DNA of 64,000 nucleotides, from NCBI RefSeq assembly GCF_022045235.1, contig NW_027266308.1, positions 53,444,001-53,508,000 on the forward strand, written 5' to 3'. This document shows, in pieces, positions 1 to 20,918 of this stretch (the stretch's first letter is position 1; every line of letters begins with the position of its first letter). The translations under genes were made by a program, and so were the position numbers. Origin of the DNA: Haliotis cracherodii. Its lineage: Eukaryota. The notes under the pieces are model-generated. The model was not told the DNA's origin. It was given only the letters and a program-made list of their open reading frames with translations, and did no database searches.

Positions 1-183
1 TAATTAGGTAAACAAAGATATAGTTCTTATTGCTGTGAAAACAATCAAGATGTTTCAACTTAAACAGCATGGCGGCTATACATGAAGAAAGAATTCCTGA
101 TTATTAACAACACAGACGTGGGAGTAATGAGTGGGTGGTGTATGGTGGTTGACTTAAAAGAAGCCCGATGGTCATGGTACGGG

Positions 184-220
184 TATAAAGTCGAAAACTT
201 CCATCCTTGAGTCATCAGTC
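184..220 (+). promoter_or_regulatory. TATA box plus Inr core promoter of homeobox copy 1 (repeated in every unit)
   Basis: TATAAAG at 184 and Inr-like TCAGTC with A at 217 (33 nt apart). The same spacing occurs in the diverged paralog (18106/18139). Confidence 0.6.
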
Positions 221-324
221 ATAGAGCTGCCCTAATCGAAACCAGCAAGACTTGTCACCGAGACCATCTTCACATTTCGAGCATTTTCTCTTTTAAAAGT
301 ATTCTATACAATTACCACACTATA

Positions 325-1541
325 ATGAAAGTGAAGAGCCCCGAAACCAAGCCAAGCAAGTGCACCGTCAACAAGACAATCGTTCCGGCAAGGAACAGAA
401 TCAAGTACTCTGCTAGTCAGGTAAACATTTAATTGCTCGAAACGTCAATAGGAAGAAAACATAAACTATTGTTATTTCAAAAGTAAATCGCAATACAAAT
501 TTAACACGTTTTCATCTCCACTATCCATATCCACAGTTGAGGGAACTGGAGAAGGTATTCGTGTCCTCTCAGTATCCTGACAGCTCCATCTTGGAGGATC
601 TCTCCAACACCATCAACATCGACGTAGAGAGACTATCGGTAGGTAAATTACACTTAACAGAAGTTCTCGAAAGAGATAATTGATCGCACAATACACAATA
701 TCATAGTGATATAAAACTCTCTTTCTTGTCCCCTTAAATGTACATAGGACCCATGAAATGTACTGAAGTGAAATTCTCATTTTTACTGCTTTATTCAGTT
801 TATATGGTAGACTTAAAGAATTGTTGTATATTTCCTTTCATAATCTTTTCAACCCATATAATAGACCCTGATTTCATTAAATGTCTCGATAATAATGACC
901 TCTTTCTGCCATACAGATCTGGTTCCAGAACCGCCGTTCCAAGTTCAAGCGTCAGTCTAAAGGTGCTCACGTGAACTGGATGAGACAGCAACTGTATCAA
1001 CAAGGAACATCACGGTCACGTGACGTAACGGCTACGGAGGAATGTCACGTGCTCACACCACCAACGACTTCCAAGAAAGATGACGTGAAAGACAAACCCA
1101 AATCAAAGTAAGTACACACCAAGTTAGTTTCACCTGCGTGTAGTGGGCTCTTATTAGCTTCAACACAATGGCATGTCTGTCTCGGACTAACAACAATCTC
1201 TTCTCTTCTTCAGCCTCCACTACCTACCCAGCACTGGACCCGGCTGCTCTTCAGTGACGGACTACGACCCCGTCTACAACCCCCTGATGTATCCATCATC
1301 ACACAACGTCTACAGCGCACTCACTGACGCAGTATCCTGTACACGGCCTACCCAGAATACTCTCCACTACCCACATCTGATGACGGAAACATCCTTCCAA
1401 GTCACACCATGCCAGCAACAGTGGACAGAGTATTCCAACCAGTCCAACTTCAGCTCTCCCGGAACTCCATACTACCAGAATTATATACCCCACTTCAACT
1501 TCCTAAGTGATCAGATGACATTTCCCCAAATAGGCGTCTAG
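325..1541 (+). CDS. Divergent PRD-class (Q50) homeobox protein, copy 1, 238 aa
   Basis: Exons 325-420, 537-638, 917-1107, 1214-1541, all GT-AG and in frame. Homeodomain PARNRIKYSASQ|LRELEKVFVSSQYPDSSILEDLSNTINIDVERLS|IWFQNRRSKFKRQS has YPD25-27, WFQNRR and the PRD-type intron at 46/47. AATAAA at 1727. Confidence 0.93.
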
Positions 1542-3901
1542 AACCTTCGGGGATGTATTCGTGGCCAGACGAAGCACGAGGGCGTAATTTGTGCAATATG
1601 CACTGCAGTCCAATGTTGAACTCATCTTGGGCCTGCTTTGTTGTTACTATTAATGTATATATTGTTGTGTTTACGTTATGGATTGCAACTGTCATTTGAA
1701 GAGGACTGTGTAAATGTTTCTGAGATAATAAACATTATCTGAAAACTATCATTTCCTGTTCTTATGAAACACGCATTTTCCCACTTTCATGTAAACCACG
1801 ATTACAAATATCTTACTGATAAACAAAGGATCCTAAACAGGCGAATCTTGGATTCGAACACATGATTGGTGGATGTTGGTTGGACTAAGAGACAAACCTC
1901 TGCACCGTTCAAATGAATCTGCTTAAAGGAAACTTTTATTGTGAAATTTAACCGTTCTTTAGGTTGTGTGATATGAAATATAAAGCATTGTATAAATCAT
2001 TTTTAGCAAAGCTACCCTCACAGGTATAGATCCTCACCTCCTTGGAAACATGTGTGTTGCAACTGCGACAGATATCCTGCTTTGCTCAGGTCACATTTAA
2101 GAGTGTTGTGGTTACATATGTTCCATCGTATATAGGTAATAACTAAAACATTAAATGAAGCTATGTTTTCAAGGCTTGAATGATACATTTGGCATCAAAT
2201 AACACTCATGTTAAACTTTGAAGCTGCTCAGTTACGGTCAATGTGATATCCCGATCTATGCCTGTAAGGTATTATCAACAACTTTCGTATGCACTTGTAA
2301 TCGCCATGTTGCGTATAGGAGCCAAACCTTCATGCTGACGTTATCGGATTATCGGGCGCTTCCTTTGGATACCATTGTCTTAAGCAGATGTCGACACAAG
2401 TTACCGCCTGGGAGCGTAAAACATATATACATGTATAAGGCGTGTCGGACAAACCAATTACGTCAATCAGTACTGTACATACATTATATACCACTAGTTC
2501 AAACCATTCATTATTTCATATGGCGAGAGATACAGACTGGTAAACGGGAAATTTACCCATAGGGTGACCCTTGTATTGCAGAAAAGCCAAGCAAGTGATG
2601 GTACAGCAATCACAGTTTAAGGTGTCATTTACAGGTATTTGGATTATTACCACGAAAAAGTACATGGCAATAGTTTCAACAGTTTTAAAAATAGTTTGCC
2701 AAATCAATACTGACATTAATTTCTTCATAACCATCATTTAGGATCCGATTTTCTATCATAATACCATATGCATCTTCCAAATGTTATATATCAATTTATT
2801 TATGTGTCAGTTTAGGTATGTAATGTGTATTTTATTATCATATTGTGAGGCGCTAAATATACAGGTGAGGAACATCAAACGTCCCATGAAATACTTGAAC
2901 CTTGTCCCTCTATAAATTGTAAATATAGTTGCTGACTTTTCAGTTTCATGTTGGTTGTGAGTCTTCATTAAATATTAAGTCCAAAAACGTCTCTACACTA
3001 TGGTGGCAGCCAACTTCTACTAATATTTCGATCAAATGATAATATACCTTACGTCGGAATATATGCCTCGGAATATATAGAATCTGAGCGTGATCTTGAA
3101 ATAGCTTGGCACATCCGTTCAGTTAGCATAGAGTAACATATTTTGAAGTTAATAAAGTGAAATATAAATAGCTACAAAGAGAAAAGTAATTTTTACGTGT
3201 TATCGGTGGTTATGATGGACACGTAACTTGAAAATTGCAAGGTTTTTACCAAACCTAAAATTCTTAAGAGAGGCGGGTAAAGACAATAAAATAAACTTTC
3301 CATATTCATATTAAGAATTTGTGTCAAACACACACTCGATTGTATAATTCCGACCATATCATGAGTATGTTTCCATTAGTCGCCATCAAATAGTGATGAT
3401 ACCAGATGTTGGCGAAAAGGCGAGCGTATCCGGCCCCGCTATTTCCCCGGTTGCACCCCGTCACAAACACATGCAAAACCAAGGCAATTGTTCACCCGAA
3501 AAAAAAACAAGGGAACAAGTTAAAAAGGGAACTGTATCAAGCATCATTTGGTCACTGGTGCGTCAGATTTGGAAATGTCATCCACATGTCTACCACAAAA
3601 GCTTTAAAAGCTTTATGTTGTAACTAAGAACACTCTTTGAAATCATCGTGGAAAGAGCTTGCTCGAGTGTACCTCAAAAGTTGTGAAATGTAGACAACTG
3701 GGAACCATTTTTCTTGGCTCACGACATATATACGCCTTATTTCTTTTGAACAAATACATGATCATCGAGATTTTTCTGTATCCTCTTATTCCAAAGATGT
3801 TCAATTATATAATGGATATGCGTTTCAAGCTTATTACGAGCATAACTGTTTCACACAATAACAAATAAGTTATCCTTGTGAAGACTACGGTATTGTTAAT
3901 G

Positions 3902-3963
3902 TTTGTTTGTTTGTTTGTTGTTTAACGCCGCACTCGGCAATATTCCAGCTATATGACGACGGT
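3902..3963 (-). mobile_element. 5'-truncated family-B SINE tail inside the repeat unit (also present in units 2 and 3)
   Basis: (TTTG)n followed by TTTAACGCCGCACTCGGCAATATTCCAGC, flanked by 11-bp TSD TATTGTTAATG (3891-3901 and 3964-3974). Confidence 0.8.
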
Positions 3964-4090
3964 TATTGTTAATGCCTGGCCCTTCCACACACTATAAGGA
4001 TTCCTCGCTAGGATTTGTAAATGTTTTGTCCCTGTTTGTTAATGAAATTGTCCCACAAAACAAGATGGACATTTAAACGTAGTGTCCACA

Positions 4091-4150
4091 CAGGTGTGCT
4101 ACGTAGGGCGGCCTCTTTGATGTAGGTGTAAAGTTTTGACAGGTAAGTGA
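4091..4150 (+). promoter_or_regulatory. Candidate upstream enhancer (E-box, Helper-like GGCGGC, TCF core CTTTGATG, TALE site TGACAG); also at ~8304 and ~12507
   Basis: Block is conserved with 17793-17852 of the diverged paralog, at the same distance from the TATA box (284 vs 289 nt). Confidence 0.55.
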
Positions 4151-4539
4151 GTACACGCTCACCTGGCGGAGGCTACTTTAATGTACCGCTACCTCGTCGA
4201 CGACTGCTACCGTTTTAATTAGGTAAACAAAGATATAGTTCTTATTGCTGTGAAAACAATCAAGATGTTTCAACTTAAACAGCATGGCGGCTATACATGA
4301 AGAAAGAATTCCTGATTATTAACAACACAGACGTGGGAGTAATGAGTGGGTGGTGTATGGTGGTTGACTTAAAAGAAGCCCGATGGTCATGGTACGGGTA
4401 TAAAGTCGAAAACTTCCATCCTTGAGTCATCAGTCATAGAGCTGCCCTAATCGAAACCAGCAAGACTTGTCACCGAGACCATCTTCACATTTCGAGCATT
4501 TTCTCTTTTAAAAGTATTCTATACAATTACCACACTATA

Positions 4540-5756
4540 ATGAAAGTGAAGAGCCCCGAAACCAAGCCAAGCAAGTGCACCGTCAACAAGACAATCGTTC
4601 CGGCAAGGAACAGAATCAAGTACTCTGCTAGTCAGGTAAACATTTAATTGCTCGAAACGTCAATAGGAAGAAAACATAAACTATTGTTATTTCAAAAGTA
4701 AATCGCAATACATATTTAACACGTCTTCATCTCCACTATCCATATCCACAGTTGAGGGAACTGGAGAAGGTATTCGTGTCCTCTCAGTATCCTGACAGCT
4801 CCATCTTGGAGGATCTCTCCAACACCATCAACATCGACGTAGAGAGACTATCGGTAGGTAAATTACACTTAACAGAAGTTCTCGAAAGAGATAATTGATC
4901 GCACAATACACAATATCATAGTGATATAAAACTCTCTTTCTTGTCCCCTTAAATGTACATAGGACCCATGAAATGTACTGAAGTGAAATTCTCATTTTTA
5001 CTGCTTTATTCAGTTTATATGGTAGACTTAAAGAATTGTTGGATATTTCATTTCATAATCTTTTCAACCCATATAATAGACCCTGATTTCATTAAATGTC
5101 TCGATAATAATGACCTCTCTCTGCCATACAGATCTGGTTCCAGAACCGCCGTTCCAAGTTCAAGCGTCAGTCTAAAGGTGCTCACGTGAACTGGATGAGA
5201 CAGCAACTGTATCAACAAGGAACATCACGGTCACGTGACATAACGGCTACGGACAAGTGTCACGTGCTCACACCACCAACGACTTCCAAGAAAGATGACG
5301 TGAAAGACAAACCCAAATCAAAGTAAGTACACACCAAGTTGGTTTCACAGGCATGTAGTGGGCTCTTATTAGCTTCAACACAATGGCATGTCTGTCTCGG
5401 ACTAACAACAATCTCTTCTCTTCTTCAGCCTCCACTACCTACCCAGCACTGGACCCGGCTGCTCTTCAGTGACGGACTACGACCACGTCTACAACCCCCT
5501 GATGTACCCATCATCACACAACGTCTACAGCGCACTCACTGACGCAGTATCCTGTACACGGCCTACCCAGAATACTCTCCACTACCCACATGTGATGACG
5601 GAAACATCCTTCCAAGTCACACCATGCCAGCAACAGTGGACAGAGTATTCCAACCAGTCCAACTTCAGCTCTCCCGGAACTCCATACTACCAGAATTATA
5701 TACCCCACTTCAACTTCCTAAGTGATCAGATGACATTTCCCCAGATAGGCGTCTAG
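4540..5756 (+). CDS. Divergent PRD-class homeobox protein, copy 2, 238 aa
   Basis: Exons 4540-4635, 4752-4853, 5132-5322, 5429-5756. Intact; variants DITATDKC, DHVY, HVM. Confidence 0.93.
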
Positions 5757-8752
5757 AACCTTCGGGGATGTATTCGTGGCCAGACGAAGCACGAGGGCGT
5801 AATTTGTGCAACATGCACTGCAGTCCAATGTTGAACTCATCTTGGGCCTGCTTTGTTACTATTAATGTATATATTGTTGTGTTTACGTTATGGATTGCAA
5901 CTGTCATTTGAAGAGGACTGTGTAAATGTTTCTGAGATAATAAACATTATCTGAAAACTATCATTTCATGTTCTTATGAAACACGCATTTTCCCACTTTC
6001 ATGTAAACCACGATTACAAATATCTTACTGATAAACAAAGGATCCTAAACAGGCGAATCTTGGATTCGAACACATGATTGGTGGATGTTGGTTGGACTAA
6101 GAGACAAACCTCTGCACCGTTCAAATGAATCTGCTTGAAGGAAACTTTTATTGTGAAATTTAACCGTTCTTTAGGTTGTGTGATATGAAATATAAAGCAT
6201 TGTATAAATCATTTTTAGCAAAGCTACCCTCACAGGTATAGATCCTCACCTCCTTGGAAACATGTGTGTTGCAACTGCGACAGATATCCTGCTTTGCTCA
6301 GGTCACATTTAAGAGTGTTGTGGTTACATATGTTCCATCGTATATAGGTAATAACTAAAACATTAAATGAAGCTATGTTTTCAAGGCTTGAATGATACAT
6401 TTGGCATCAAATAACACTCATGTTAAACTTTGAAGCTGCTCAGTTACGGTCAATGTGATATCCCGATCTATGCCTGTAAGGTATTATCAACAACTTTCGT
6501 ATGCACTTGTAATCGCCATGTTGCGTATAGGAGCCAAACCTTCATGCTGACGTTATCGGATTATCGGGCGCTTCCTTTGGATACCATTGTCTTAAGCAGA
6601 TGTCGACACAAGTTACCGCCTGGGAGCGTAAAACATATATACATGTATAAGGCGTGTCGGACAAACCAATTACGTCAATCAGTACTGTACATACTTTATA
6701 TACCACTAGTTCAAACCATTCATTATTTCATATGGCGAGAGATACAGACTGGTAAACGGGAAATTTACCCATAGGGTGACCCTTGTATTGCAGAAAAGCC
6801 AAGCAAGTAATGGTACAGCAATCACAGTTTAAGGTGTCATTTACAGGTATTTGGATTATTACCACGAAAAAGTACATGGCAATAGTTTCAACAGTTTTAA
6901 AAATAGTTTGCCAAATCAATACTGACATTAATTTCTTCATAACCATCATTTAGGATCCGATTTTCTATCATAATACCATATGCATCTTCCAAATGTTATA
7001 TATCAATTTATTTATGTGTCAGTTTAGGTATGTAATGTGTATTTTATTATCATATTGTGAGGCGCTAAATATACAGGTGAGGAACATCAAACGTCCCATG
7101 AAATACTTGAACCTTGTCCCTCTATAAATTGTAAATATAGTTGCTGACTTTTCAGTTTCATGTTGGTTGTGAGTCTTCATTAAATATTAAGTCCAAAAAC
7201 GTCTCTACACTATGGTGGCAGCCAACTTCTACTAATATTTCGATCAAATGATAATATACCTTACGTCGGAATATATGCCTCGGAATATATAGAATCTGAG
7301 CGTGATCTTGAAATAGCTTGGCACATCCGTTCAGTTAGCATAGAGTAACATATTTAGAAGTTAATAAAGTGAAATATAAATAGCTACAAAGAGAAAAGTA
7401 ATTTTTACGTGTTATCGGTGGTTATGATGGACACGTAACTTGAAAATTGCAAGGTTTTTACCAAACCTAAAATTCTTAAGAGAGGCGGGTAAAGACAATA
7501 AAATAAACTTTCCATATTCATATTAAGAATTTGTGTCAAACACACACTCGATTGTATAATTACGACCATATCATGAGTATGTTTCCATTAGTCGCCATCA
7601 AATAGTGATGATACCAGATGTTGGCAAAAAAGGCGAGCGTATCCGGCCCCGCTATTTCCCCGGTTGCACCCCGTCACAAACACATGCAAAACCAAGGCAA
7701 TTGTTCACCCGAAAAAAAAACAAGGGAACAAGTTAAAAAGGGAACTGTATCAAGCATCATTTGGTCACTGGTGCGTCAGATTTGGAAATGTCATCCACAT
7801 GTCTACCACAAAAGCTTTAAAAGCTTTATGTTGTAACTAAGAACACTCTTTGAAATCATCGTGGAAAGAGCTTGCTCGAGTGTACCTCAGAAGTTGTGAA
7901 ATGTAGACAACTGGGAACCATTTTTCTTGGCTCACGACATATATACGCCTTATTTCTTTTGAACAAATACATGATCATCGAGATTTTTCTGTATCCTCTT
8001 ATTCCAAAGATGTTCAATTATATAATGGATATGCGTTTCAAGCTTATTACGAGCATAACTGTTTCACACAATAACAAATAAGTCATCCTTGTGAAGACTA
8101 CGGTATTGTTAATGTTTGTTTGTTTGTTTGTTGTTTAACGCCGCACTCGGCAATATTCCAGCTGTATGACGACGGTTATTGTTAATGCCTGGCCCTTCCA
8201 CACACTATAAGGATTCCTCGCTAGGATTTGTAAATGTTTTGTCCCTGTTTGTTAATGAAATTGTCCCACAAAACAAGATGTACATTTAAACGTAGTGTCC
8301 ACACAGGTGTGCTACGTAGGGCGGCCTCTTTGATGTAGGTGTAAAGTTTTGACAGGTAAGTGAGTACACGCTCACCTGGCGGAGGCTACTTTAATGTACC
8401 GCTACCTCGTCGACGACTGCTACCGTTTTAATTAGGTAAACAAAGATATAGTTCTTATTGCTGTGAAAACAATCAAGATGTTTCAACTTAAACAGCATGG
8501 CGGCTATACATGAAGAAAGAATTCCTGATTATTAACAACACAGACGTGGGAGTAATGAGTGGGTGGTGTATGGTGGTTGACTTAAAAGAAGCCCGATGGT
8601 CATGGTACGGGTATAAAGTCGAAAACTTCCATCCTTGAGTCATCAGTCATAGAGCTGCCCTAATCGAAACCAGCAAGACTTGTCACCGAGACCATCTTCA
8701 CATTTCGAGCATTTTCTCTTTTAAAAGTATTCTATACAATTACCACACTATA

Positions 8753-9969
8753 ATGAAAGTGAAGAGCCCCGAAACCAAGCCAAGCAAGTGCACCGTCAAC
8801 AAGACAATCGTTCCGGCAAGGAACAGAATCAAGTACTCTGCTAGTCAGGTAAACATTTAATTGCTCGAAACGTCAATAGGAAGAAAACATAAACTATTGT
8901 TATTTCAAAAGTAAATCGCAATACAAATTTAACACGTTTTCATCTCCACTATCCATATCCACAGTTGAGGCAACTGGAGAAGGTATTCGTGTCCTCTCAG
9001 TATCCTGACAGCTCCATCTTGGAGGATCTCTCCAACACCATCAACATCGACGTAGAGAGATTATCGGTAGGTAAATTACACTTAACAGAAGTTCTCGAAA
9101 GAGATAATTGATCGCACAATACACAATATCATAGTGATATAAAACTCTCTTTCTTGTCCCCTTAAATGTACATAGGACCCATGAAATGTACTGAAGTGAA
9201 ATTCTCATTTTTACTGCTTTATTCAGTTTATATGGTAGACTTAAAGAATTGTTGGATATTTCCTTTCATAATCTTTTCAACCCATATAATAGACCCTGAT
9301 TTCATTAAATGTCTCGATAATAATGACCTCTTTCTGCCATACAGATCTGGTTCCAGAACCGCCGTTCCAAGTTCAAGCGTCAGTCTAAAGGTGCTCACGT
9401 GAACTGGATGAGACAGCAACTGTATCAACAAGGAACATCACGGTCACGTGACGTAACGGCTACGGAGGAATGTCACGTGCTCACACCACCAACGACTTCC
9501 AAGAAAGATGACGTGAAAGACAAACCCAAATCAAAGTAAGTACACACCAAGTTAGTTTCACCTGCGTGTAGTGGGCTCTTATTAGCTTCAACACAATGGC
9601 ATGTCTGTCTCGGACTAACAACAATCTCTTCTCTTCTTCAGCCTCCACTACCTACCCAGCACTGGACCCGGCTGCTCTTCAGTGACGGACTACGACCCCG
9701 TCTACAACCCCCTGATGTATCCATCATCACACAACGTCTACAGCGCACTCACTGACGCAGTATCCTGTACACGGCCTACCCAGAATACTCTCCACTACCC
9801 ACATCTGATGACGGAAACATCCTTCCAAGTCACACCATGCCAGCAACAGTGGACAGAGTATTCCAACCAGTCCAACTTCAGCTCTCCCGGAACTCCATAC
9901 TACCAGAATTATATACCCCACTTCAACTTCCTAAGTGATCAGATGACATTTCCCCAAATAGGCATCTAG
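8753..9969 (+). CDS. Divergent PRD-class homeobox protein, copy 3, 238 aa
   Basis: Exons 8753-8848, 8965-9066, 9345-9535, 9642-9969. Intact; homeodomain residue 15 is Q; ends QIGI. Confidence 0.93.
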
Positions 9970-12955
9970 AACCTTCGGGGATGTATTCGTGGCCAGATGA
10001 AGCACGAGGGCGTAATTTGTGCAATATGCACTGCAGTCCAATGTTGAACTCATCTTGGGCCTGCTTTGTTACTATTAATGTATATATTGTTGTGTTTACG
10101 TTATGGATTGCAACTGTCATTTGAAGAGGACTGTGTAAATGTTTCTGAGATAATAAACATTATCTGAAAACTATCATTTCATGTTCTTATGAAACACGCA
10201 TTTTCCCACTTTCATGTAAACCACGATTACAAATATCTTACTGATAAACAAGGGATCTTAAACAGGCGAATCTTGGATTCGAACACATGATTGGTGGATG
10301 TTGGTTGGACTAAGAGACAAACCTCTGCACCGTTCAAATGAATCTGCTTGAAGGAAACTTTTATTGTGAAATTTAACCGTTCTTTAGGTTGTGTGATATG
10401 AAATATAAAGCATTGTATAAATCATTTTTAGCAAAGCTACCCTCACAGATATAGATCCTCACCTCCTTGGAAACATGTGTGTTGCAACTGCGACAGATAT
10501 CCTGCTTTGCTCAGGTCACATTTAAGAGTGTTGTGGTTACATATGTTCCATCGTATATAGGTAATAACTAAAACATTGAATGAAGCTATGTTTTCAAGGC
10601 TTGAATGATACATTTGGCATCAAATAACTCTCATGTTAAACTTTGAAGCTGCTTGGTTACGGTCAATGTGATATCCCGATCAATGCCATACGGTATTATC
10701 AACAACTTTCGTATGCACCTGTAATCGCCATGTTGCGTATAGGAGCCAAACCTTCATGCTGACGTTATCGGATTATCGGGCGCTTCCTTTGGATATCATT
10801 GTCTTAAGCTGCTGTCGACACACGTTACCGTCTGGGAGCGTAAAACATACATACATGTATAAGGCATGTCGGACAAACCAATTACGTCAATCAGTACTGT
10901 ACATACATTATATACCACTAGTTCAAACCATTCATTATTTCATATGGTGAGAGATACAGACTGGTAAACGGGAAATTTACCTATAGGGTGACCCTTGTAT
11001 TGCAGAAAAGCCAAGCAAGTAATGGTACAGCATTTACAGTTTAAGGTGTCATTTACAGGTATTTGGATTATTACCACGAAAAAGTACATGGCAATAGTTT
11101 CAACAGTTTTAAAAATAGATTGCCAAATGAATACTGACATTAAATTCTTCATAACCATCATTTAGGACCCGATTTTCTATCATAATACCATATGCATCTT
11201 CCAAATGTTATATATCAGTTTATTTATGTGTCAGTTTAGGTATGTAATGTGTATTTTATTATCATATTGTGAGGCGCTAAATATACAGGTGAGGAACATC
11301 AAACGTCCCATGAAATACTTGCACCTTATCCCTCTATAAATTGTAAATATAGTTGCTGACTTTTCAGTTTCATGTGGGTTGTGAGTCTTCACTAAATATT
11401 AAGTCCAAAAACATCTCTACACTTTGGTGGCAGCCAACTTCTACTCTACTAATATTTTGATCAAATGATAATATCCCTTACGTAGGAATATATGCATCAG
11501 AATATATAGAATCTGAGCGTGATCTTGAAATAGCTTGGTACATCCGTTCAATTAGCATAGAGTAAAATATTTAGAAGTTAATAAAGTGAAATATAAATAG
11601 CTACAAAGAGAAAAGTAATTTTTACGTGTAATTGGTGGTTATGATGGACACGTAACTTGAAAATTGCAAGGTTTTTACCAAACTCAAAATTCTTAAGAGA
11701 GACAATAAAATAAACTTTCCATATTCATATTAAGAATTTGTGTCAAACACACACTCGATTGTATAATTCCGACCATATCATGAGTATGTTTCCATTAATC
11801 GCCATCAAATAGTGATGATACCAGATGTTGGCGAAAAGGCGAGCGTATCCGGCCCCGCTATTTCCCCGGTTACACCCCGTCACAAACACATGCAAAACCA
11901 AGGCAATTGTTCACCCGGGAAAAAAAAGGGAACAAGTTAAAAAGGGAACTGTATCAAGCATCATTTGGTCACTGATGCTTCAAATTTGGAAATGTCATCC
12001 ACATGTCTACCACAAAACGTTTTAAAAGCTTTATGTTGTAACTAAGAACACTCTTTGAAATCATCGTGGAAAGAGCTTGCTCGAGTGTACCTCAAAAGTT
12101 GTGAAATGTAGACAACTGGGAACCATTTATCTTGGCTCACGACATATATACGCCTTATTTCTTTTGAACAAAAATGATCATCGAGATTTTTCTGTATCCT
12201 CTTATTCCAAAGATGTTCAATTATATAATGGATATGCGTTTCAAGCTTATTACGAGCATAACTGTTTCACACAATAGCAAATAAGTTATCCTTGTGAAGA
12301 CTACGGTATTGTTAATGTTTGTTTGTTTGTTTGTTGTTTAACACCGCACTCAGCAATATTCCAGCTATATGACGGCGGTTATTGTTAATGCCTGGCCCTT
12401 CCACACACTATAAGGATTCCTCGCTAGGATTTGTAAATGTTTTGTCCCTGTTTGTTAATGAAATTGTCCCACAAAACAAGATAGACATTTAAACGTAGTG
12501 TCCACACAGGTGTGCTACGTAGGGCGGCCTCTTTGATGTAGGTGTAAAGTTTTGACAGGTAAGTGAGTACACGCTCACCTGGCGGAGGCTACTTTAATGT
12601 ACCGCTACCTCGTCGACGACTGCTACCGTTTTAATTAGGTAAACAAAGATATAGTTCTTATTGCTGTGAAAACAATCAAGATGTTTCAACTTAAACAGCA
12701 TGGCGGCTATACATGAAGAAAGAATTCCTGATTATTAACAACACAGACGTGGGAGTAATAAGTGGGTGGTGTATGGTGGTTGACTTAAAAGAAGCCCGAT
12801 GGTCATGGTACGGGTATAAAGTCGAAAACTTCCATCCTTGAGTCATCAGTCAAAGAGCTGCCCTAATCGAAACCAGCAAGACTTGTCACCGAGACCATCT
12901 TCACATTTCGAGCATTTTCTCTTTTAAAAGTATTCTATACAATTACCACACTAAA

Positions 12956-14181
12956 ATGAAAGTGAAGAGCCCCGAAACCAAGCCAAGCAAGTGCACCGCC
13001 AACAAGACAATCGTTCCGGCAAGGAACAGAATCAAGTACTCTGCTAGTCAGGTAAACATTTAATTGCTCGAAACGTCAATAGGAAGAAAACATAAACTAT
13101 TGTTATTTCAAAAGTAAATCGCAATACAAATTTAACACGTTTTCATCTCCACTATCCATATCCACAGTTGAGGCAACTGGAGAAGGTATTCGTGTCCTCT
13201 CAGTATCCTGACAGCTCCATCTTGGAGGATCTCTCCAACACCATCAACATCGACGTAGAGAGACTATCGGTAGGTAAATCCACTTTATTACACTTAACAG
13301 AAGTTCTCGAAAGAGATAATTGATCGCACAATACACAATATCATAGTGATATAAAACTCTCTTTCTTGTCCCCTTAAATGTACATAGGACCCATGAAATG
13401 TACTGAAGTGAAATTCTCGCTTTTACTGCTTTATTCAGTTTATATGGTAGACTTAAAGAATTGTTGTATATTTCCTTTCATAATCTTTTCAACCCATATA
13501 ATAGACCCTGATTTCATTAAATGTCTCGATAATAATGACCTCTTTCTGCCATACAGATCTGGTTCCAGAACCGCCGTTCCAAGTTCAAGCGTCAGTCTAA
13601 AGGTGCTCACGTGAACTGGATGAGACAGCAACTGTATCAACAAGGAACGTCACGGTCACGTGACGTAACGGCTACGGACGAGTGTCACGTGCTCACACCA
13701 CCAACGACTTCCAAGAAAGATGACGTGAAAGACAAACCCAAATCAAAGTAAGTACACACCAAGTTAGTTTCACCTGCGTGTAGTGGGCTCTTATTAGCTT
13801 CAACACAATGGCATGTCTGTCTCGGACTAACAACAATCTCTTCTCTTCTTCAGCCTCCACTACCTACCCAGCACTGGACCCGGCTGCTCCTCAGTGACGG
13901 ACTACGACCCCGTCTACACCCCCCTGATGTATCCATCATCACACAACGTCTACAGCGCACTCACTGACGCAGTATCCTGTACACGGCCTACCCAGAATAC
14001 TCTCCACTACCCACATCTGATGACGGAAACATCCTTCCAAGTCACACCATGCCAGCAACAGTGGACAGAGTATTCCAACCAGTCCAACTTCAGCTCTCCC
14101 GGAACTCCATACTACCAGAATTATATACCCCACTTCAACTTCCTAAGCGATCAGATGACATTTCCCCAGATAGGCGTCTAG
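12956..14181 (+). CDS. Divergent PRD-class homeobox protein, copy 4, 238 aa
   Basis: Exons 12956-13051, 13168-13269, 13557-13747, 13854-14181. Intact; intron 2 is 9 bp longer; homeodomain residue 15 is Q. Confidence 0.93.
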
Positions 14182-14642
14182 AACCTTCGGGGATGTATTC
14201 GTGGTCAGATGAAGCACGAGGGCGTAATTTGTGCAATATGCACTGCAGTCCAATGTTGAACTCATCTTGGGCCTGCTTTGTTACTATTAATGTATATATT
14301 GTTGTGTTTACGTTATGGATTGCAACTGTCATTTGAAGAGGACTGTGTAAATGTTTCTGAGATAATAAACATTATCTGAAAACTATCATTTCATATTCTT
14401 ATGCAGCCCGCATTTTCCCACTTTTATGTAAACCAGGATTATAAGTATCTTACTGATAAACAAAGGATCCTAAACAGGCGAATCTTGGATTCGAACACAT
14501 GATTGGTGGATGTTGGTTGGACAAAGAGTCAAACCTCTGCACAGATCAAAGGAAACTGCTTGAAGGAAACTTTTAATGTGACATTTAACCGTTCTTTTGT
14601 TGGGTAATATCAAATATACAGCATCTACCCTCACAGATATAG

Positions 14643-14792: not shown

Positions 14793-15729
14793 AGATATAG
14801 ATCCTCACCTCCTTGGAAAAATGTGTGTTGCAACTGCGACAGATATCCTGCTTTGCTGAGATATAGAAATCCAATTCCCAGTCGTGCATTTATTATCAAT
14901 TATCAATACCACTTGTGAAGATACCTCAAACCAGGACGTCACAACAGATACCTCACACTCATGTTAGAATATACAGCAACTTTGAAGCTACTCAGTTCTG
15001 GTCAATGTCATCACCTGATCTATGCCTGTAAGGTATTATCAACAACTTTTGTATGCACTTGCAATCGCCATGTTGCGTATATGAGCCAAACCTTCATGCT
15101 AACGGATTATCGGGCGCTTTCCTCGGACTGAAGCAGCTGTCGACACAAGGTACCGTCTGGGAACATCAAACATATATACAGTACCATATTGTTTCTTTAT
15201 TACTGTTTTAGCACTGAAAAGGAAATTTGTAAGCACTTAATGCAGAACCAATACGTCACACTACACTAAATCCACCATACTGTGCACCATAAAATACCCT
15301 TAATAGTCATTTTATGTTTTTAATGTGTTGTAATACCAACACTTGAATTTCAGTTTCTTGAATTCTATAGAGATATAACACTGACACAGTTTACGTAAGT
15401 AATAGCACTGTGGAGACACCTAACTGATTTTCAGTGACCCCTTCATATAATTTTCACCAAAACATTTCGTCTTATGCCCAATGAAATCTGTTTCAGGAGA
15501 TAAGCGAGCCTGGTTAATGTCTGGCGTTGACGTTTTACATTTTGAAGATGTCCATGTGAGATTATAAAAAGATAACAAAATTCGATTTCAGCCCTACGAA
15601 ATTTGAAAACTAATAAGACAACCCGTGTTAATCAGACGGCAAATGAGTGCCGAACAAATCGACTCCCGATTGTGGGAAGCCATTCAGTGTGTTTTTCAAC
15701 CGTGCCACAAACCATGATATGTGGTTTTC

Positions 15730-16010
15730 CGGAACCTTTAAACCGATTTATCAAAAGATAATGACGTAGCTCCTTACAAACCAATAACCATTTTTTGTAT
15801 GCTGTTCAAGCAAAATACTCACAGCTGTCATAATAATGGTAGTATCCACTTCCTCATACAACATGAAATTTTGTCAGAAGACCATGCTGGATATCGTAAT
15901 TAAATGCTATCACTTCTCAATAATCACTTCCATGTTTTCGACTTCTCAAAAGTGTTCGATACTGATCACACTTTTCAAAACTATGGGGAGTCTGGAATCG
16001 TGGCAATAGT
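15730..16010 (+). mobile_element. Decayed LINE reverse-transcriptase fragment
   Basis: Frameshifted remnants PIYQK..YKPIT and FDFSKVFDT...KLWG resemble the non-LTR RT motifs PIxKK/YRPIS and DxSKAFD. Confidence 0.45.
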
Positions 16011-16324
16011 AATTCCGATGGTCAACTATTTAAGTCATGTACCAGGTATGTCGCCCAGTGACCAAAGATAAGGAAACTTGTTATTTGTGAAAACGGTGTC
16101 AGACATGGTGAAAATGTCACACCCATGCTCTTCACTTACATCTTCAAACTATCTCGGCATTGTTTTTGCAATCAAGGTCGTTTTGTCCATTTCGAAAGAT
16201 TATACCAACCAAATATGATCATGACACTTTTCTACATTAGAATACGCTCTGTGTTTACCAACTGATTTACATTACAAACTATCGCATCCCAACGAACCTG
16301 TGCGAAATATAGGGATCTGAATCC

Positions 16325-17285
16325 CTAACAGTTATATACAAATCCCATTTATCTGGATTTATTTCGAGGCTTAGAAAAGGGGACATACAGCCAACGATCT
16401 ATGAAGAAACAATATATATCGCTGCATTACGATTTTGAGTGAAATAATATGTTGATGTTGTTGCTGAACACCACATCACACGTCCAACAAGACTCCAGTT
16501 CCGCCGTCCAGATCACATACAACAACATCAAGCAACCAGATACGGTGTCTTTGCCTCTAAATTTTAACTCAACATGATCAAGGAACTAACGGAAGCCATT
16601 CACATCAAAAGATACCAGCCGTCCATCAAACAAAGACCAACTAACGAAAGCCATTCACATCAAAAGATATCAGCCGTCCGTCACACAAAGAGCAACTAAC
16701 GGAAGCCATTCACATCAAAAGATACCAGCCGTCCATTAAAAGAGAGCAACTAACGGAAGCTATTCATATTAAAAGATATCGGCCGTCCATCATACAAAGA
16801 CCAACTAACGGAAGCCATTCACATCAAAAGATACCATCCGTCCATCACACAAAGACCAACTAACGGAAGCCATTCACATCAAAAGATACCATCCGTCCAT
16901 CACACAAAGACCAACTAACGGAAGCCATTCACATCAAAGATACCACCCGTCCATCACACAAAGACCAACTAACGGAAGCCATTCACATCAAAAGATACCA
17001 TCCGTCCATCACACAAAGACCAACTAACGGAAGCCATTCACATCAAAAGATATCGGCCGTCCATCATACAAAGACCAACTAACGGAAGCCATTCACATCA
17101 AAAGATATCGGCCGTCCATCATACAAAGACCAACTAACGGAAGCTATTCACATCAAAAGATATCGGCCGTCCATCATACATAAACCAACTAACGGAAGCT
17201 ATTCACATCAAAAGATATCGGCCGTCCATCCAACAGAGACCAGGGTAACTTCATCCCGTCAGTGTACCATGACCTCGTCAACTAC
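16325..17285 (+). mobile_element. Decayed Penelope-like element, GIY-YIG endonuclease C-terminal region
   Basis: Remnants VIYK, EHH, SSSAV, then LTEAIHIKRYQPSI and NRDQGNFIPSVYHDLV match the PLE GIY-YIG end pattern EAIxI..P.LNRD.G. Confidence 0.6.
16584..17232 (+). repeat. 55-bp minisatellite, 12 copies
   Basis: Unit AACTAACGGAAGCCATTCACATCAAAAGATACCAGCCGTCCATCACACAAAGACC starting at 16584, 16639 ... 17187. Confidence 0.97.
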
Positions 17286-17792
17286 AATCACACTGGCTCT
17301 CACCATTGTAATGATACACTGTATACGAAAATAACATATTTTTGTGATATAACATGTCTAAAAAGTTTAAAGATGATTCCCTATTGAAGAATATCTAGCC
17401 TATGTTTTGACGACCTTCATAAGATTAATGAACATAAAAAATATCAAACATTTAAACGCACCGTGAAGAGGAATTGTGGGACCAGCTAATTGGTAATTTT
17501 AAACGGAGTTACGTCCCTTGTACAAGCTCCCTCCAGGGACCACATGCAAACTTCAGACACTGCGGCACAGTATGGCACAGTAAAATATCATACATTTACC
17601 TAAAACCATTTAGGCATAATGATACTCGCACAAATATTTGTTTCAAACAGAGACAAATACACACACTGTCTCTTTCAGTATTTTTTTTGCATGACTGGTG
17701 TGTACATGTTTAATCCTATCACTATGTAATGCTGGCTTCTTCCGCTGTCCAATCTGCTGATTATGTGTTTGTTAAACCAACAATTACACGCT

Positions 17793-18224
17793 CAGGTGCG
17801 CTAAGTCGGGCGACCTCTTTGATGTAGGTGGAACGTTTTGACAGGTAAATGAGGATGGACGCTGGAGACGGTGGCCAAGTCTTGGATGTGCGCCTACCCG
17901 TGCACAAGGGGAGTAGGATGCTGCTATATAGATTGAGAAAACAATTAACATTCTCATTGCTGTAAAAATAATAATGGTTTCGCAAGAAGCTCTCCTCGGC
18001 GAGTCGTATCTGCTCTTGTGAAAGAGATCTGATTCTTACAACAACATGATCTCAATGTGTTGTTTTTCGATAGGTGTTGAAAGAGTTCCGACAGCCAGAA
18101 ATACGTATAAAACTCACACGTTCCGATATCACAGCATCATTTCTGATATCTCATTTCGTGAACAAGTTGTCTGCAGCGTCTATAGATTTAAACAGTTCGT
18201 CACGCCAACTATCTAACCATACAA
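17793..18224 (+). promoter_or_regulatory. Enhancer block, TATA/Inr and probable non-coding first exon of paralog 5
   Basis: CAGGTG..GGCGACCTCTTTGATGTAGGTG..TTTGACAGGTAA at 17793-17852; TATAAAA at 18106; TCATTT with A at 18139; donor CAA|GTAAGT at 18225; acceptor TTCAG at 18885. Confidence 0.55.
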
Positions 18225-18276
18225 GTAAGTTGCCGAGTCAAACAGCATGTTTCTATTGCATGATAATGCAGCTGAA

Positions 18277-18498
18277 TGTGTTTGTTTGTTGTTTAACGCC
18301 GCACTCAGCAATATTCCAGCTATGTGACGGCGGTCTATAAGTAATCTGGACCAAACAATCCAGTGATTGATATCATGAGCATTGATCCACGCAATTGGGA
18401 TACGATGACACGCATCAACCAAGTCAGCGAGTCTGACCATCCGATCCTCGGCAAGCATGGGGTGCTGAAGACCTATTCCATCCTTGATCTTCACGGGT
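18277..18498 (-). mobile_element. SINE family B, (AAAC)n tail
   Basis: Matches 45450-45694; TSD CAGCTGAA. Confidence 0.85.
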
Positions 18499-18600
18499 CA
18501 GCTGAAATTAGTTTGGTTTGGATGCATTGCATATGCCCTTCTATATTAAAAGGTTACTAAAATAAAAACCCTGCGGTGTGCTTACAGAATGTAAATGTAC

Positions 18601-18766
18601 GTTTGTTTAAAGCCGCACTCAGCAATATTCCAGCTATAAGATCATGAACATCGATCTATGCAGTTGGGATACGGTGACATGCATCAACCAAGTCACCGAT
18701 CCCGTCAGTCGCCTCTTACAAGCATGGGCTGCTGAAGACAAAATCTAACCCCGATCTTCAGGGGTT
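18601..18766 (-). mobile_element. SINE family B, internally deleted
   Basis: Family-B head and tail both present. Confidence 0.8.
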
Positions 18767-18886
18767 ACGGAATGTATATGTGAGTGGAGGTGTGTCTTCC
18801 GGGTAGCATTGCTCATACCACTGCATGTGTACACCCCTACAATATATAACATAACAAGTACAGTATTTTCATTTCTTCAATTCAGT

Positions 18887-20204
18887 ATGAAGGTGAAGAG
18901 TCCAGAGATCAAGCCCGGCAAGAGTGACGTCAGCAAAAGGGTACTTCCGGTCAGGAACAGAATCAAGTACTCTGCCGTTCAGGTGAGTACACAAATAGGT
19001 TGCACAAAAAATCCCCATCAGAATTCCTACTATTACTTATGCGTGATTGCAAATTATGAGTATGGTTTACAGCAATGTCAAGTCGGGGGAAACCAAAAGG
19101 TTAAATTATGAATTTAATTACAACGATATTTTCCTTCACAGTTGAGGCAACTGGAGAAGGTGTTCCTGTCCTCTCAGTATCCTGACAGCTCCATCTTGGA
19201 TGATCTCTCCAACACCATCAATATTGACGTAGAGAGACTATCGGTAAGCTGATTCTTCATAGTATATGAGCTGATATATAATTTGATAATTTTGATAATT
19301 TAATTATATTTATTGATATTATTTATATTATTATTTAATTATAATAATCATGCCAGTTACCATATTTTGTATTTCTAGGAACAACACGTGTGCCACTATG
19401 TGTATATATAATGTTTATTATTTTCCACAGATCTGGTTCCAGAACCGTCGCTCCAAGTTTAAACGGCAGTCTAAGGATGGCCACGTGGCCTGGATGAGGA
19501 AACAGTTGTATCATGGCGGTACAATCCAGTCACGTGACAGTTCCCAGAAGGAACGGTGTCATGTGCTCACTCCGCGCACTCCTTCCACGTGCATCGACGC
19601 TGCTGACAAGGCCAGGTCAAAGTGAGTCTCAAGCTCTTCATTCCAAATAATTTGAATTCTTTGGCACCCAAGCTAAGGAGACAACTAAAAATAAGGATTT
19701 GGTGCATTAGCCTGGACGATTTTGTTGTATACTATACCGGATTTTGCACATGCTGTCAAATGATGCAAATATACAGGCTGTGATACAGCTGGAATAATGG
19801 GTTTACCCACTCTAATATGATTGTCAGAAATGTATCTACGGACACATACAAACCAATGATTACCAACCGTTCTTCTTTCCAGCCTCCACTACCTGCCAAG
19901 CGCCGAACCCAGCTACTCGCCTACATCAGACTACACATGCAGCCTCACGACGTCATCTACGTATCCATCCCCTTACACTATTCATGATGGAGCTTTCAAC
20001 GACACGCCTGGTACAGAACCCACACGGACCCCTCTTCAGTACTACCCGGCCCCCGAGGTGTCATACCAGGAGGCATATCAATGGGCAGCACAACCTACTG
20101 GTCCCTCCTGGCAGTCCTTGGCAACCGGAACCTACCCTTACCAGAGTTATTCCCCCTTCGACTATCCTTCAGTTCATTTTCCTCAAATTGGCTCCAGCTA
20201 TTAG
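18887..20204 (+). CDS. Divergent PRD-class homeobox protein, older paralog (copy 5), 236 aa
   Basis: Exons 18887-18982, 19142-19243, 19431-19621, 19883-20204, with the same phases and identical exon 1-3 lengths as the array copies. Homeodomain is 55-56/60 identical. Ends HFPQIGSSY. AATAAA at 20349. Confidence 0.93.
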
Positions 20205-20918
20205 GCGTGTTTATTGACTTATTCAAGGTATACCCAGGTCATACAAAGTGCTTTTTTCGATGTCATAATGTCGGTCGATGTCTGGTATCTGTAGTTGCTA
20301 TGTTTGTTAGAGCGACCCATCTCGTCATGTTGACATTGTGTAAATACAAATAAATACATAATAGTTATTTCATTGTCTTCTTATATTTAATCTGATGACA
20401 AGTAAAACTCCGTACCCCGTCTTGTTCCGATGTAAACAGCCTTATACACGTACTGACGATTGCGATCTGGGTGACGGACACATAGACAGCAAGTTGGTCT
20501 CACTGAAATGTCTCGCCTCCCCAGAATATCTGGTTACGGTTTGTAAATCATTTGCAGTCTCCTTTATTTGTCGTTAATGCTTCACAGGTCTGCATGTACA
20601 CTCTCTCTATCAATATTTCACGGGCCTGTACACGCCACGTTCTTCTTTCGTCAATTCGGACGAAAAAATGTAAATCTACCCCTTGTTATCCTGACACCAT
20701 TTACTATTCACGATACATATGTATTTTTAGTAAAAGGAGCTAAATGTGGTCGTAACAGACTGATTGTTAGGACAGACTTAACTACTGGGCTGGAATTGTG
20801 GCAAATGTATTTTGGATAGTAAAGTCCACCCATAACATGTACAGATATATTCGCCAAGTGACCACCAAAGATCAGGATACTTATTTGGTCAAACCGGTGT
20901 CAGACGAGGTGAAAATAT

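What the first reader, a model, noticed from the sequence alone, without database searches (positions are those of the whole stretch)
1..20354. Macrosatellite-like array of intact PRD-class homeobox genes (D4Z4/DUX4-like architecture) in an invertebrate
Seen: a ~4.21-kb unit repeats head-to-tail at least 4 times. Each unit holds a whole transcription unit (upstream block, TATA/Inr, 4 exons, AATAAA). All four ORFs are intact and each encodes a slightly different 238-aa protein. An older paralog caps the array. Established: mammalian PRD-class genes of the early embryo or germline (DUX4 in D4Z4, mouse Dux, Obox, Rhox) occur in copy-number-variable tandem arrays, and lineage-specific novel homeobox genes are expressed in spiralian cleavage stages. 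Inference: a compact, TATA-driven, dosage-amplified homeobox array for a short, strong burst of early zygotic expression, evolved convergently in a mollusc. Unlike DUX4, these genes retain coding-region introns.
Basis: partly seen in the sequence, partly recalled or inferred. Interest (0 to 1): 0.85.

Follow-up and report, generated by a model that had tools for sequence, protein, structure and literature searches.

The report
Abalone tandem array of homeobox genes
One black abalone chromosome carries eleven head-to-tail 4.2-kb repeats, nine holding an intact abalone-only paired-like homeobox gene; the layout is real and resembles known early-embryo homeobox arrays, but when the genes are expressed could not be tested.

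Summary
The window is Haliotis cracherodii contig C45. The ~4.21-kb head-to-tail repeat runs about 30 kb further upstream. In all there are 11 units: 9 intact four-exon genes, which give 7 different 238-aa proteins, and 2 copies that share an exon-3 deletion. An intact older paralog (236 aa) lies downstream, and a third family member sits on contig C5.

My exon models match RefSeq XP_071080775-784 letter for letter. The protein is a divergent Q50 paired-like homeodomain factor. I found it only in Haliotis, and it is multi-copy in H. rufescens, H. asinina and H. rubra. Array copies group by species, and one unit carries a conversion tract from a distant unit, so the array evolves in concert. 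dN/dS against the paralog is 0.31 (0.15 across the homeodomain part).

Similar arrays are already known: Dux, Obox, Rhox, rabbit LEUTX and sea urchin hbox12/pmar1/micro1. I therefore call this a new member of a known kind. The scan had already flagged the same array from the adjacent window (s1-823165).

The parts
1..4215 (+). Array unit u1. It is the 8th of 11 units; the array continues upstream of the window.
   Evidence: Direct repeats. BLAST of one unit against C45:53384001-53508000.
4216..8428 (+). Array unit u2. It carries a C/D-type conversion tract at unit positions 835-1292.
8429..12631 (+). Array unit u3, the most divergent full unit (1.6-2.2% from the others).
12632..14624 (+). Array unit u4. 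This is the last unit: the gene is complete but the spacer is cut short.
325..1541 (+). Gene u1. Exons 325-420, 537-638, 917-1107, 1214-1541. 238 aa. Identical to XP_071080780.
4540..5756 (+). Gene u2. Exons 4540-4635, 4752-4853, 5132-5322, 5429-5756. 238 aa. Identical to XP_071080781. The homeodomain is residues 21-80, with introns at homeodomain positions 12/13 and 46/47.
8753..9969 (+). Gene u3. Exons 8753-8848, 8965-9066, 9345-9535, 9642-9969. 238 aa. Identical to XP_071080782.
12956..14181 (+). Gene u4. Exons 12956-13051, 13168-13269, 13557-13747, 13854-14181. 238 aa. Identical to XP_071080783.
4399..4435 (+). Core promoter of u2: TATAAAG at 4399-4405 and Inr-like TCAGTC at 4430-4435, 31 bp apart. 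The same pair sits at -141 and -110 from the ATG in every unit except upstream copy E.
   Evidence: Motif reading only; no TSS data.
5939..5944 (+). AATAAA polyadenylation signal of u2. The equivalents are 183-186 nt after the stop in all intact copies.
7508..7909 (.). Interspersed SINE-like repeat inside each unit's spacer (unit positions about 3293-3694). It is dispersed over many contigs at 70-79% identity.
   Evidence: 4598 first-look candidates
18887..20204 (+). Older flanking paralog. Exons 18887-18982, 19142-19243, 19431-19621, 19883-20204. 236 aa. Identical to XP_071080784. AATAAA at 20349-20354.

Best explanation
This is a genuine tandem gene array in the black abalone (Haliotis cracherodii).

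Shown here:
- A 4.2-kb segment holding one complete small gene has been amplified head to tail to 11 units. The gene has a TATA plus Inr-like core promoter, four short exons and a poly(A) signal.
- The units are kept alike by unequal crossing-over and gene conversion.
- The gene encodes a 238-aa protein with a divergent Q50 paired-like homeodomain, a conserved N-terminal MKVKSPE motif, conserved HVNWMRQQLY and CHVLTP motifs after the homeodomain, and an S/T/P/Y/Q/N-rich tail.
- The family was found only in Haliotis. It has three loci in this genome: the array, a flanking paralog and a paralog on contig C5.
- Over the long term the coding sequence is under purifying selection.

Inferred, not shown:
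- The protein is a TAAT-core DNA-binding transcription factor.
- Amplification serves dosage, giving much transcript from short, TATA-driven genes within a narrow time window. By analogy with Dux, Obox, hbox12/pmar1 and the oyster novel PRD2/PRD4 genes, that window is most plausibly the cleavage to blastula embryo or the germ line.
For: Array and copies:
- Period and extent.
- Nine intact ORFs giving seven proteins, with GT-AG at all introns.
- Models identical to RefSeq XP_071080775-784.

Protein class:
- Homeodomain by exon pieces and precomputed PF00046 on all family proteins.
- Nearest solved homeodomains to exon 2 are HESX1, PRRX2, PHOX2B, CRX, Paired, Aristaless, ALX4 and PITX2.
- R5 and Q50 fit the PRD-LIKE class as tabulated in PMC4901127.

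Selection and distribution:
- dN/dS against the flanking paralog is 0.31 overall and 0.15 across the N-terminus plus homeodomain.
- Multi-copy orthologues in H. rufescens (at least 6 accessions), H. asinina (at least 12) and H. rubra (3).
- phmmer of exon 4 against 1.84 billion representatives finds only this family.

Concerted evolution:
- Copies cluster by species (asinina 100/99, rubra 97/94). The paralog clade falls outside all arrays at 100/100.
- Units differ by 0.1-2.2% and neighbours are most alike.
- Unit u2 carries a C/D-type tract although those units lie more than 25 kb away.

Promoter and analogies:
- TATA and Inr-like motifs and AATAAA sit at fixed positions in the units.
- Precedents: PMC5322547, PMC5370098, PMC4901127.
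Against: - None of the 20 holder runs is on record as RNA, and the two RNA-guessed runs that carry a species label shared with the best holders hold next to none of the words.
- Within the array, 14 of 20 variable coding sites change the protein. The CDS is no less variable than the introns. Selection on individual copies is therefore not demonstrable.
- Three of 11 units are damaged: two lack exon 3, and one has a LINE between TATA and Inr.
- All RefSeq models of the H. asinina array lack homeodomain residues 47-50 (I-W-F-Q). If real, DNA binding in that species is doubtful.
- There are no P3 palindromes (TAATNNNATTA) in the units.
- The promoters of the three paralogous loci do not align.
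Confidence: 0.55

Rival explanations
1. The array is real and functional, but it is expressed in gonad or germ cells, or in a larval or adult cell type, rather than in cleavage-stage embryos. This would resemble mouse Rhox, or the late-expressed novel PRD genes of the oyster.
For: - In the oyster, five of nine novel PRD genes are expressed after the trochophore stage and only two from egg to blastula (PMC5322547).
- Mouse Rhox and Obox are reproductive-tissue clusters (PMC4901127).
- Sixteen small runs from 11 studies hold 9-31% of the sampled words. If these are RNA, that would be odd for a gene confined to a few cleavage cycles.
Against: - The two RNA-guessed runs with a shared species label hold next to none of the words.
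- No protein from a Logan run assembly matched this family full length. The only Logan hit is an unspliced piece of the C5 locus.
- The short, compact, TATA-plus-Inr gene build fits rapid-cycle transcription. This is inference from my own knowledge.
Confidence: 0.28
2. The amplification is a neutral by-product of an unstable, repeat-rich region undergoing birth-and-death with homogenisation. Extra copies add nothing, and many are silent or decaying. Only one or a few genes, or the single-copy paralogs, do the work.
For: - Nonsynonymous to silent variable sites within the array are 14:6, close to the neutral expectation of about 3.5:1.
- CDS, introns and upstream sequence are equally variable.
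- Two units share an exon-3 deletion and one has a split promoter.
- Decayed relics lie upstream on the minus strand.
- The H. asinina models lack I-W-F-Q.
Against: - All nine full-length copies keep a 717-nt ORF, all splice sites, TATA/Inr (eight of nine) and AATAAA.
- A multi-copy state is kept in four Haliotis species.
- The genic part is about half as variable as the spacer (2% against 4.2%, Fisher p 0.002-0.02).
Confidence: 0.15
3. The copies are an assembly artefact: uncollapsed alleles or a misassembled repeat.
For: None found. Read depth could not be examined.
Against: - Eleven units lie in one orientation and carry unit-specific markers: a shared exon-3 deletion in two units, a 3.36-kb LINE with a 5-bp target duplication in one, an 8.5-kb interruption in the first, and graded divergence of 0.1-2.2%.
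- Alleles cannot give 11 head-to-tail copies.
- Three other Haliotis assemblies also hold several copies.
Confidence: 0.02

Closest known systems
Human D4Z4/DUX4 and mouse Dux macrosatellite arrays
   Same: Kilobase-scale units (here 4.2 kb, against 3.3 kb for D4Z4 from my own knowledge) repeat head to tail at high identity. Each unit holds a PRD-like homeobox ORF. The family is restricted to one lineage and evolves rapidly and in concert (PMC4901127, PMC13558733).
   Different: - One homeodomain here, not two.
- Three coding-region introns, so the duplication was at the DNA level and not from a retrogene.
- Every unit has its own TATA/Inr and AATAAA.
- AT-rich (GC 0.36-0.42).
- Copy-number polymorphism, chromatin state and ZGA expression were not tested.
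Sea urchin hbox12/pmar1/micro1 multigene family
   Same: It is an invertebrate, lineage-restricted paired-like homeobox family. Its small intron-containing genes were duplicated as intact units and are clustered in the genome. Copy number varies between individuals, and expression in early cleavage is transient (PMC5370098).
   Different: - There is no detectable sequence relationship beyond the homeodomain class.
- The urchin genes have two exons and are often divergently oriented or in two-gene clusters. They do not form a regular 11-unit head-to-tail array.
- The urchin expression and repressor function are demonstrated. Here they are unknown.
Mammalian Obox, Rhox and ETCHbox (LEUTX, TPRX) tandem clusters
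   Same: These are PRD-like genes with very divergent homeodomains. They are tandemly duplicated in unstable regions, with different copy numbers in related species and gene conversion. Examples include a large LEUTX array in the rabbit (PMC8208926) and Rhox with 33 genes (PMC4901127).
   Different: Most of those clusters hold diverged paralogs rather than units 98-99.9% identical. Their parent gene is known (Crx for ETCHbox, PMC4904359). No parent family could be named here.
Spiralian novel homeobox genes (non-canonical PRD clades I-VIII; SPILE/TALE expansions)
   Same: These are taxonomically restricted, hard-to-classify homeobox genes of molluscs and annelids. Several are expressed from egg to blastula, for example oyster PRD2, PRD4 and most novel TALE genes (PMC5322547, PMC6118893, PMC8524836). 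Another first-reader note (s1-826363) reports a tandem TALE array in this same genome.
   Different: Membership of any PRD clade I-VIII was not tested, because no reference set was on hand. No relative outside Haliotis was detected. Those papers do not describe a regular high-identity macrosatellite-like array.

Membership tests
Homeodomain superfamily (Pfam PF00046) | A 60-residue three-helix homeodomain that matches the profile. | tested here: met
   Exon 2 matches profile positions 13-42 (22.6 bits) and exon 3 matches 46-57 (14.5 bits), in register across the intron. Precomputed PF00046 is recorded on all full-length family proteins.
PRD-LIKE (paired-like) class | Typical 60-aa homeodomain without the TALE 3-residue insertion, with R at position 5 and Q (or K) at position 50. 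| tested here: met
   The homeodomain is residues 21-80, with R5, Q50, W48, F49, N51 and R53. Class table in PMC4901127.
PRD-LIKE (paired-like) class | The homeodomain is the only large domain, with no Paired domain. | tested here: met
   Only the Homeodomain model was found, on exons 2 and 3; exons 1 and 4 had no hit at E up to 10. The protein is only 238 aa.
PRD-LIKE (paired-like) class | The homeodomain is closest to PRD/PRD-like homeodomains. | tested here: inconclusive
   Eight of the ten best PDB matches to exon 2, and 12 of the 17 listed, are PRD-class homeodomains: HESX1, PRRX2, PHOX2B, CRX, Paired, Al, ALX4 and PITX2. E-values are only 0.01-1.3 on a 34-aa piece. RefSeq's automatic names (OTX1 B-like, PRRX2-like, CRX-like, Pax-6-like, PROP1-like) point the same way. 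No class-wide phylogeny was run.
PRD-LIKE (paired-like) class | Intron between homeodomain codons 46 and 47. This is common in PRD-class genes (from my own knowledge). | tested here: met
   Exon 2 ends after homeodomain residue 46 and exon 3 starts at residue 47. A second intron lies at 12/13.
PRD-LIKE (paired-like) class | EH1 or OAR accessory motifs. These are present in many families of the class but not all. | tested here: not met
   By eye, the sequences contain no EH1-like or OAR-like motif. This is not a defining requirement (PMC4901127).
Otx family (RefSeq name 'OTX1 B-like') | K at homeodomain position 50 and a C-terminal Otx tail (PF03529). | tested here: not met
   Position 50 is Q. 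Exon 4 has no Pfam hit at E up to 10. The Atlas feature hit to an Otx2 cluster scores 0.84, below the level of a usable lead. The automatic name should not be read as orthology.
Macrosatellite of the D4Z4 kind | Head-to-tail tandem array of kilobase-scale units at high identity. | tested here: met
   Eleven units of about 4.21 kb, all on the + strand, with 97.8-99.9% pairwise identity among the eight full units.
Macrosatellite of the D4Z4 kind | Copy number varies between individuals. | not testable with these tools
The only data are between species, as lower-bound counts of listed RefSeq accessions: 9, at least 6, at least 12 and 3.
Macrosatellite of the D4Z4 kind | Intronless double-homeobox ORF in a GC-rich unit. 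| tested here: not met
   Single homeodomain, three introns, GC 0.36-0.42.
Early zygotic / ZGA homeobox factor (Dux, Obox, pmar1-like in function) | Transient expression at cleavage stages or at genome activation. | not testable with these tools
The runs are coded and none is on record as RNA. No literature was found.

The most novel reading that the evidence does not exclude
The abalone array is a convergent counterpart of DUX4/Dux and of sea urchin pmar1/hbox12. It would be a genus-restricted paired-like factor whose roughly ten near-identical TATA-driven copies fire together for a few cleavage cycles. It would act at the top of zygotic genome activation or early blastomere specification in a spiral-cleaving embryo. 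The I-W-F-Q-less form seen in H. asinina would be a natural dominant-negative or a lost-binding variant.
Probability: 0.3. Interest if true: 0.7.

Novelty: new member of a known kind. Interest (0 to 1): 0.5.

Why it matters
Very early development keeps recruiting young, fast-evolving homeobox genes, and it often does so as tandem arrays. Examples are Dux, Obox and LEUTX in mammals, pmar1/hbox12 in sea urchins and SPILE/TALE genes in spiralians. Why this happens is an open question.

A clean, fully assembled array of 9 intact and 2 broken copies would make the question testable in abalones. Multi-copy orthologues exist in four species, single-copy paralogs serve as internal controls, and there is direct evidence of concerted evolution. 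Copy-specific SNPs allow per-unit expression to be read, and the embryos are farmed and accessible.

The finding also warns that the RefSeq names ('OTX1 B-like', 'Pax-6-like', 'prophet of Pit-1-like') do not reflect orthology.

Without expression data it remains a well-documented structural finding, not a new mechanism.

Tried and rejected
I used exon pieces beside them (window:5168-5320 only inside local scripts, window:5430-5753, window:4752-4853) and database protein ids restricted to residues 1-66 or 79 to the end. Local scripts on the window files still read the stretch for translation, a motif scan and dN/dS. align_proteins, which is not a search, saw whole database proteins.

2. Joined model. 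I sent no joined spliced model to any search tool. Exons went by reference, and RefSeq proteins returned by the tools stood in for the joined model.

4. The look-up of sequencing runs gave coded runs, none on record as RNA. The 9-31% word shares in small runs could equally come from low-coverage DNA of a multi-copy locus. I draw no conclusion on expression.

5. Autoregulation through P3 palindromes is rejected. No TAATNNNATTA site lies in any unit, and the window holds 6 sites against 3.1 expected.

6. A promoter shared among the paralogs is rejected. The 550 bp upstream of the array gene, the flanking paralog and the C5 paralog do not align.

7. Otx membership is rejected (Q50, no Otx tail).

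8. The ESM Atlas search on the tail gave only sub-threshold leads: Otx2 0.84 and SEBOX 0.79.

9. Nine literature searches found no paper on this abalone family.

10. I ran no structure prediction or complex prediction. The fold is not in doubt and no partner is proposed.
Full report
WHAT IS THERE

The window is G000:C45:53444001-53508000 of a 1.18-Gb, 80-contig assembly. Direct repeats with start-to-start spacings of 4203-4215 bp and 94-100% identity tile window 1-14624. I read one unit and derived a four-exon model. I then located its equivalents by anchors and translated them.

All four window copies have a 717-nt ORF, GT-AG at all three introns and a 238-aa product. The four products differ pairwise at 2-7 residues. 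The homeodomain is residues 21-80. It is split by introns at homeodomain positions 12/13 and 46/47. It has R5, W48, F49, Q50, N51 and R53.

Searched exon by exon and by reference, exon 2 matches Pfam Homeodomain positions 13-42 (E 9.5e-5). Exon 3 matches positions 46-57. Exons 1 and 4 match nothing.

The downstream paralog at 18887-20204 has the same exon structure and is intact at 236 aa.

A search of the genome itself with the genic part of a unit found further full copies upstream on C45, two paralogous loci and nothing else. I fetched 60 kb upstream and compared it with one unit by BLAST. The array spans C45:53413579-53458624. Its content, from upstream to downstream:

- Copies A and B share a deletion of unit positions 717-1099, which removes exon 3. 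Because they share it, the deleted form was itself duplicated.
- Copies C and D are full units.
- Copy E has a 3357-bp insertion.
- Copies F, G, u1, u2 and u3 are full units.
- Copy u4 is the truncated last unit.

All nine full-length genes are intact and give seven distinct proteins.

TATAAAG at -141 and an Inr-like TCAGTC at -110 from the ATG are present in every unit except E. AATAAA lies 183-186 nt after each stop.

In copy E a 5'-truncated LINE sits exactly between the TATA and the Inr-like motif. Its features are RVT_1 at 2e-47, RNase_H at 3e-18, a (TAAG)n tail and a TCCTT target duplication. That copy has an intact ORF but a split core promoter.

IDENTITY OF THE ORGANISM AND OF THE GENES

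phmmer of exon 4 against 1.84 billion representatives found one related cluster, and its representative is a Haliotis rubra protein. Word-based searches used that protein restricted to residues 79-236 and 1-66. They found only Haliotis proteins.

The cluster listing shows nine H. cracherodii RefSeq accessions, XP_071080775-783, named 'homeobox protein OTX1 B-like'. They lie on a contig of 70,628,833 bp, which is exactly the length of C45. XP_071080784 is the paralog. My spliced translations equal these ten proteins letter for letter and in genome order. NCBI's pipeline therefore arrived at the same models independently.

The listing also shows at least 6 accessions in H. rufescens, at least 12 in H. 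asinina and 3 in H. rubra.

A third family member on contig C5 (L007, minus strand) has the same exon structure. It is XP_071096113, 'prophet of Pit-1-like', 245 aa, and has an H. rubra orthologue at 87% identity.

Homeodomain identities are 55/60 between array and flanking paralog and 45/60 between array and C5.

The varied automatic names (OTX1, PRRX2, CRX, Pax-6, PROP1) and the PDB ranking for exon 2 agree on the PRD-like class but on no particular family. That ranking runs HESX1, PRRX2, PHOX2B, CRX, Paired, Aristaless, ALX4, PITX2. Otx membership fails, because position 50 is Q and there is no Otx tail.

HOW THE ARRAY EVOLVES

In a maximum-likelihood tree the array proteins group by species: asinina 100/99, rubra 97/94, rufescens 80/72. 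The cracherodii and rufescens flanking paralogs form a 100/100 clade outside all arrays. The array/paralog duplication therefore predates the split of these four species. The array copies have since been homogenised or re-amplified within each lineage.

Full units differ by 0.12-2.2%, and neighbours are the most alike. Unit u2 carries a run of nine C/D-type variants between unit positions 835 and 1292. That run is flanked by sites where it does not share the C/D state, although C and D lie more than 25 kb away. Many other site pairs are incompatible with a single tree. This is direct evidence for gene conversion or unequal exchange.

The genic part plus the upstream 740 bp has about half the variable columns of the spacer (about 2% against 4.2%, Fisher p 0.002-0.02). 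CDS, introns and upstream sequence are alike in this respect. Among coding variants 14 change the protein and 6 do not.

Selection on individual copies therefore cannot be shown. Long-term constraint on the protein can be: dN/dS against the paralog is 0.31 overall and 0.15 over the N-terminus plus homeodomain, with dS about 1.1.

WHAT IT MOST LIKELY DOES

Shown: a lineage-restricted paired-like homeodomain protein is encoded by a concertedly evolving array of self-contained transcription units.

Inferred: it binds TAAT-core DNA as Q50 homeodomains do. The tail (58% S/T/P/Y/Q/N) would be a disordered effector region. Amplification would serve dosage in a short expression window.

- The compact build: 1.2 kb from ATG to stop, with introns of 106-278 bp.
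- The TATA plus Inr-like promoter at canonical spacing.
- Several precedents: oyster novel PRD2/PRD4 and most novel TALE genes from egg to blastula (PMC5322547); sea urchin hbox12/pmar1/micro1 (PMC5370098); Dux, Obox and Rhox (PMC4901127); and the rabbit LEUTX array (PMC8208926).

The runs that hold the sequence are coded and none is on record as RNA. Two RNA-guessed runs that carry a species label shared with the best holders hold next to none of the words. No paper on these genes was found.

I put early-embryo expression at roughly one in three. A germ-line or other restricted pattern is about equally likely. A largely neutral amplification is less likely.

AN UNEXPLAINED POINT

Every RefSeq model of the H. 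asinina array lacks homeodomain residues 47-50 (I-W-F-Q) but is otherwise conserved. In the window the first 12 nt of exon 3 end in a second acceptor-like TTCCAG. An in-frame acceptor 12 nt downstream would produce exactly that form.

It may be a fixed deletion, an alternative splice or an annotation choice. It matters because W48, F49 and Q50 are central to fold and recognition. I could not check it.

COMPARISON AND NOVELTY

It is not a D4Z4 homologue or close analogue in detail. It has a single homeodomain, three introns and an AT-rich unit. Every unit has its own promoter and poly(A) signal.

The closest invertebrate precedent is the sea urchin hbox12/pmar1/micro1 family, so an amplified early-type paired-like family outside mammals is not new in kind. 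Two things appear undescribed in the literature I could search. One is a regular, fully resolved, high-identity 11-unit array in a mollusc. The other is its conservation as a multi-copy locus with concerted evolution across Haliotis.

The genes themselves are already in RefSeq under misleading automatic names. I class the finding as a new member of a known kind.

LIMITS AND RULES FOLLOWED

- I sent no joined spliced model to any search tool. Exons went by reference, and proteins returned by the tools stood in for the joined model.
- After I sent nothing from 5130-5165, or its copies, to a search tool. Protein-id searches were restricted to residues beside it.
- The N run at 62040-62169 was left alone.

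Noticed in passing
L005:4217-7573 (C45:53428217-53431573), in array copy E: A 5'-truncated LINE with an open RT plus RNase H reading frame, a (TAAG)n tail and a TCCTT target duplication. It is inserted between the TATA box and the Inr-like motif of one array unit. Another first-reader note (s1-826161) reports RNase H-bearing LINEs at transcription starts of a TALE homeobox family in this genome. Whether this is the same element or a shared target preference was not examined.
   Followed up: partly
L003:9828 to L004:2905 (C45:53413828-53416905), array copies A and B: The two upstream-most units share the same deletion of unit positions 717-1099, which removes exon 3. Copy A also lacks unit positions 2169-3980. 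These are pseudogene units that were themselves duplicated.
   Followed up: partly
L003:911-1043 and L003:1044-9578: A 133-bp piece of unit sequence (unit positions 3839-3975, 94% identity) lies 8.5 kb upstream of the array. It is separated from it by inserted DNA. This matches the nested transposon insertion noted by another reader (s1-823410). I did not analyse the insert.
   Followed up: no
L001:6590-7713, L001:9907-10000 and L002:1-35, L002:753-875 (minus strand): Decayed, stop-containing fragments resembling exons 3 and 4 of the family lie in inverted orientation about 50 kb upstream of the window. One fragment type is present twice, 840 bp apart. They look like relics of further paralogs.
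   Followed up: partly
L007:3659-6371, minus strand (C5:28195659-28198371): A third intact family member sits on another chromosome-scale contig: XP_071096113, 245 aa, with the same intron positions. Its tail holds PQQ(S/N)PSY repeats.
   Followed up: partly
RefSeq proteins of H. asinina (alignment A2, columns 69-72): All H. asinina array proteins lack homeodomain residues 47-50 (I-W-F-Q). In the window an in-frame alternative acceptor 12 nt inside exon 3 would give this form.
   Followed up: partly
window 7508-7909 and the same place in each unit: A SINE-like interspersed repeat of about 300-400 bp sits in the unit spacer. Thousands of first-look matches occur across the genome at 70-79% identity. 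It could have seeded the first unequal exchange.
   Followed up: no
window 16584-17242; 46311-46837; 50682-51302: Three minisatellites: a 55-bp unit x12 between the array and the paralog, a 73-bp unit x7.2 and a 58-bp unit x10.7.
   Followed up: no
window 18213-18494 (minus) and 20929-21150 (plus): Similar ORF fragments (both containing MLAEDRMVRLADLVDACH) flank the paralog on opposite strands. This is probably an interspersed repeat in inverted copies around the gene.
   Followed up: no
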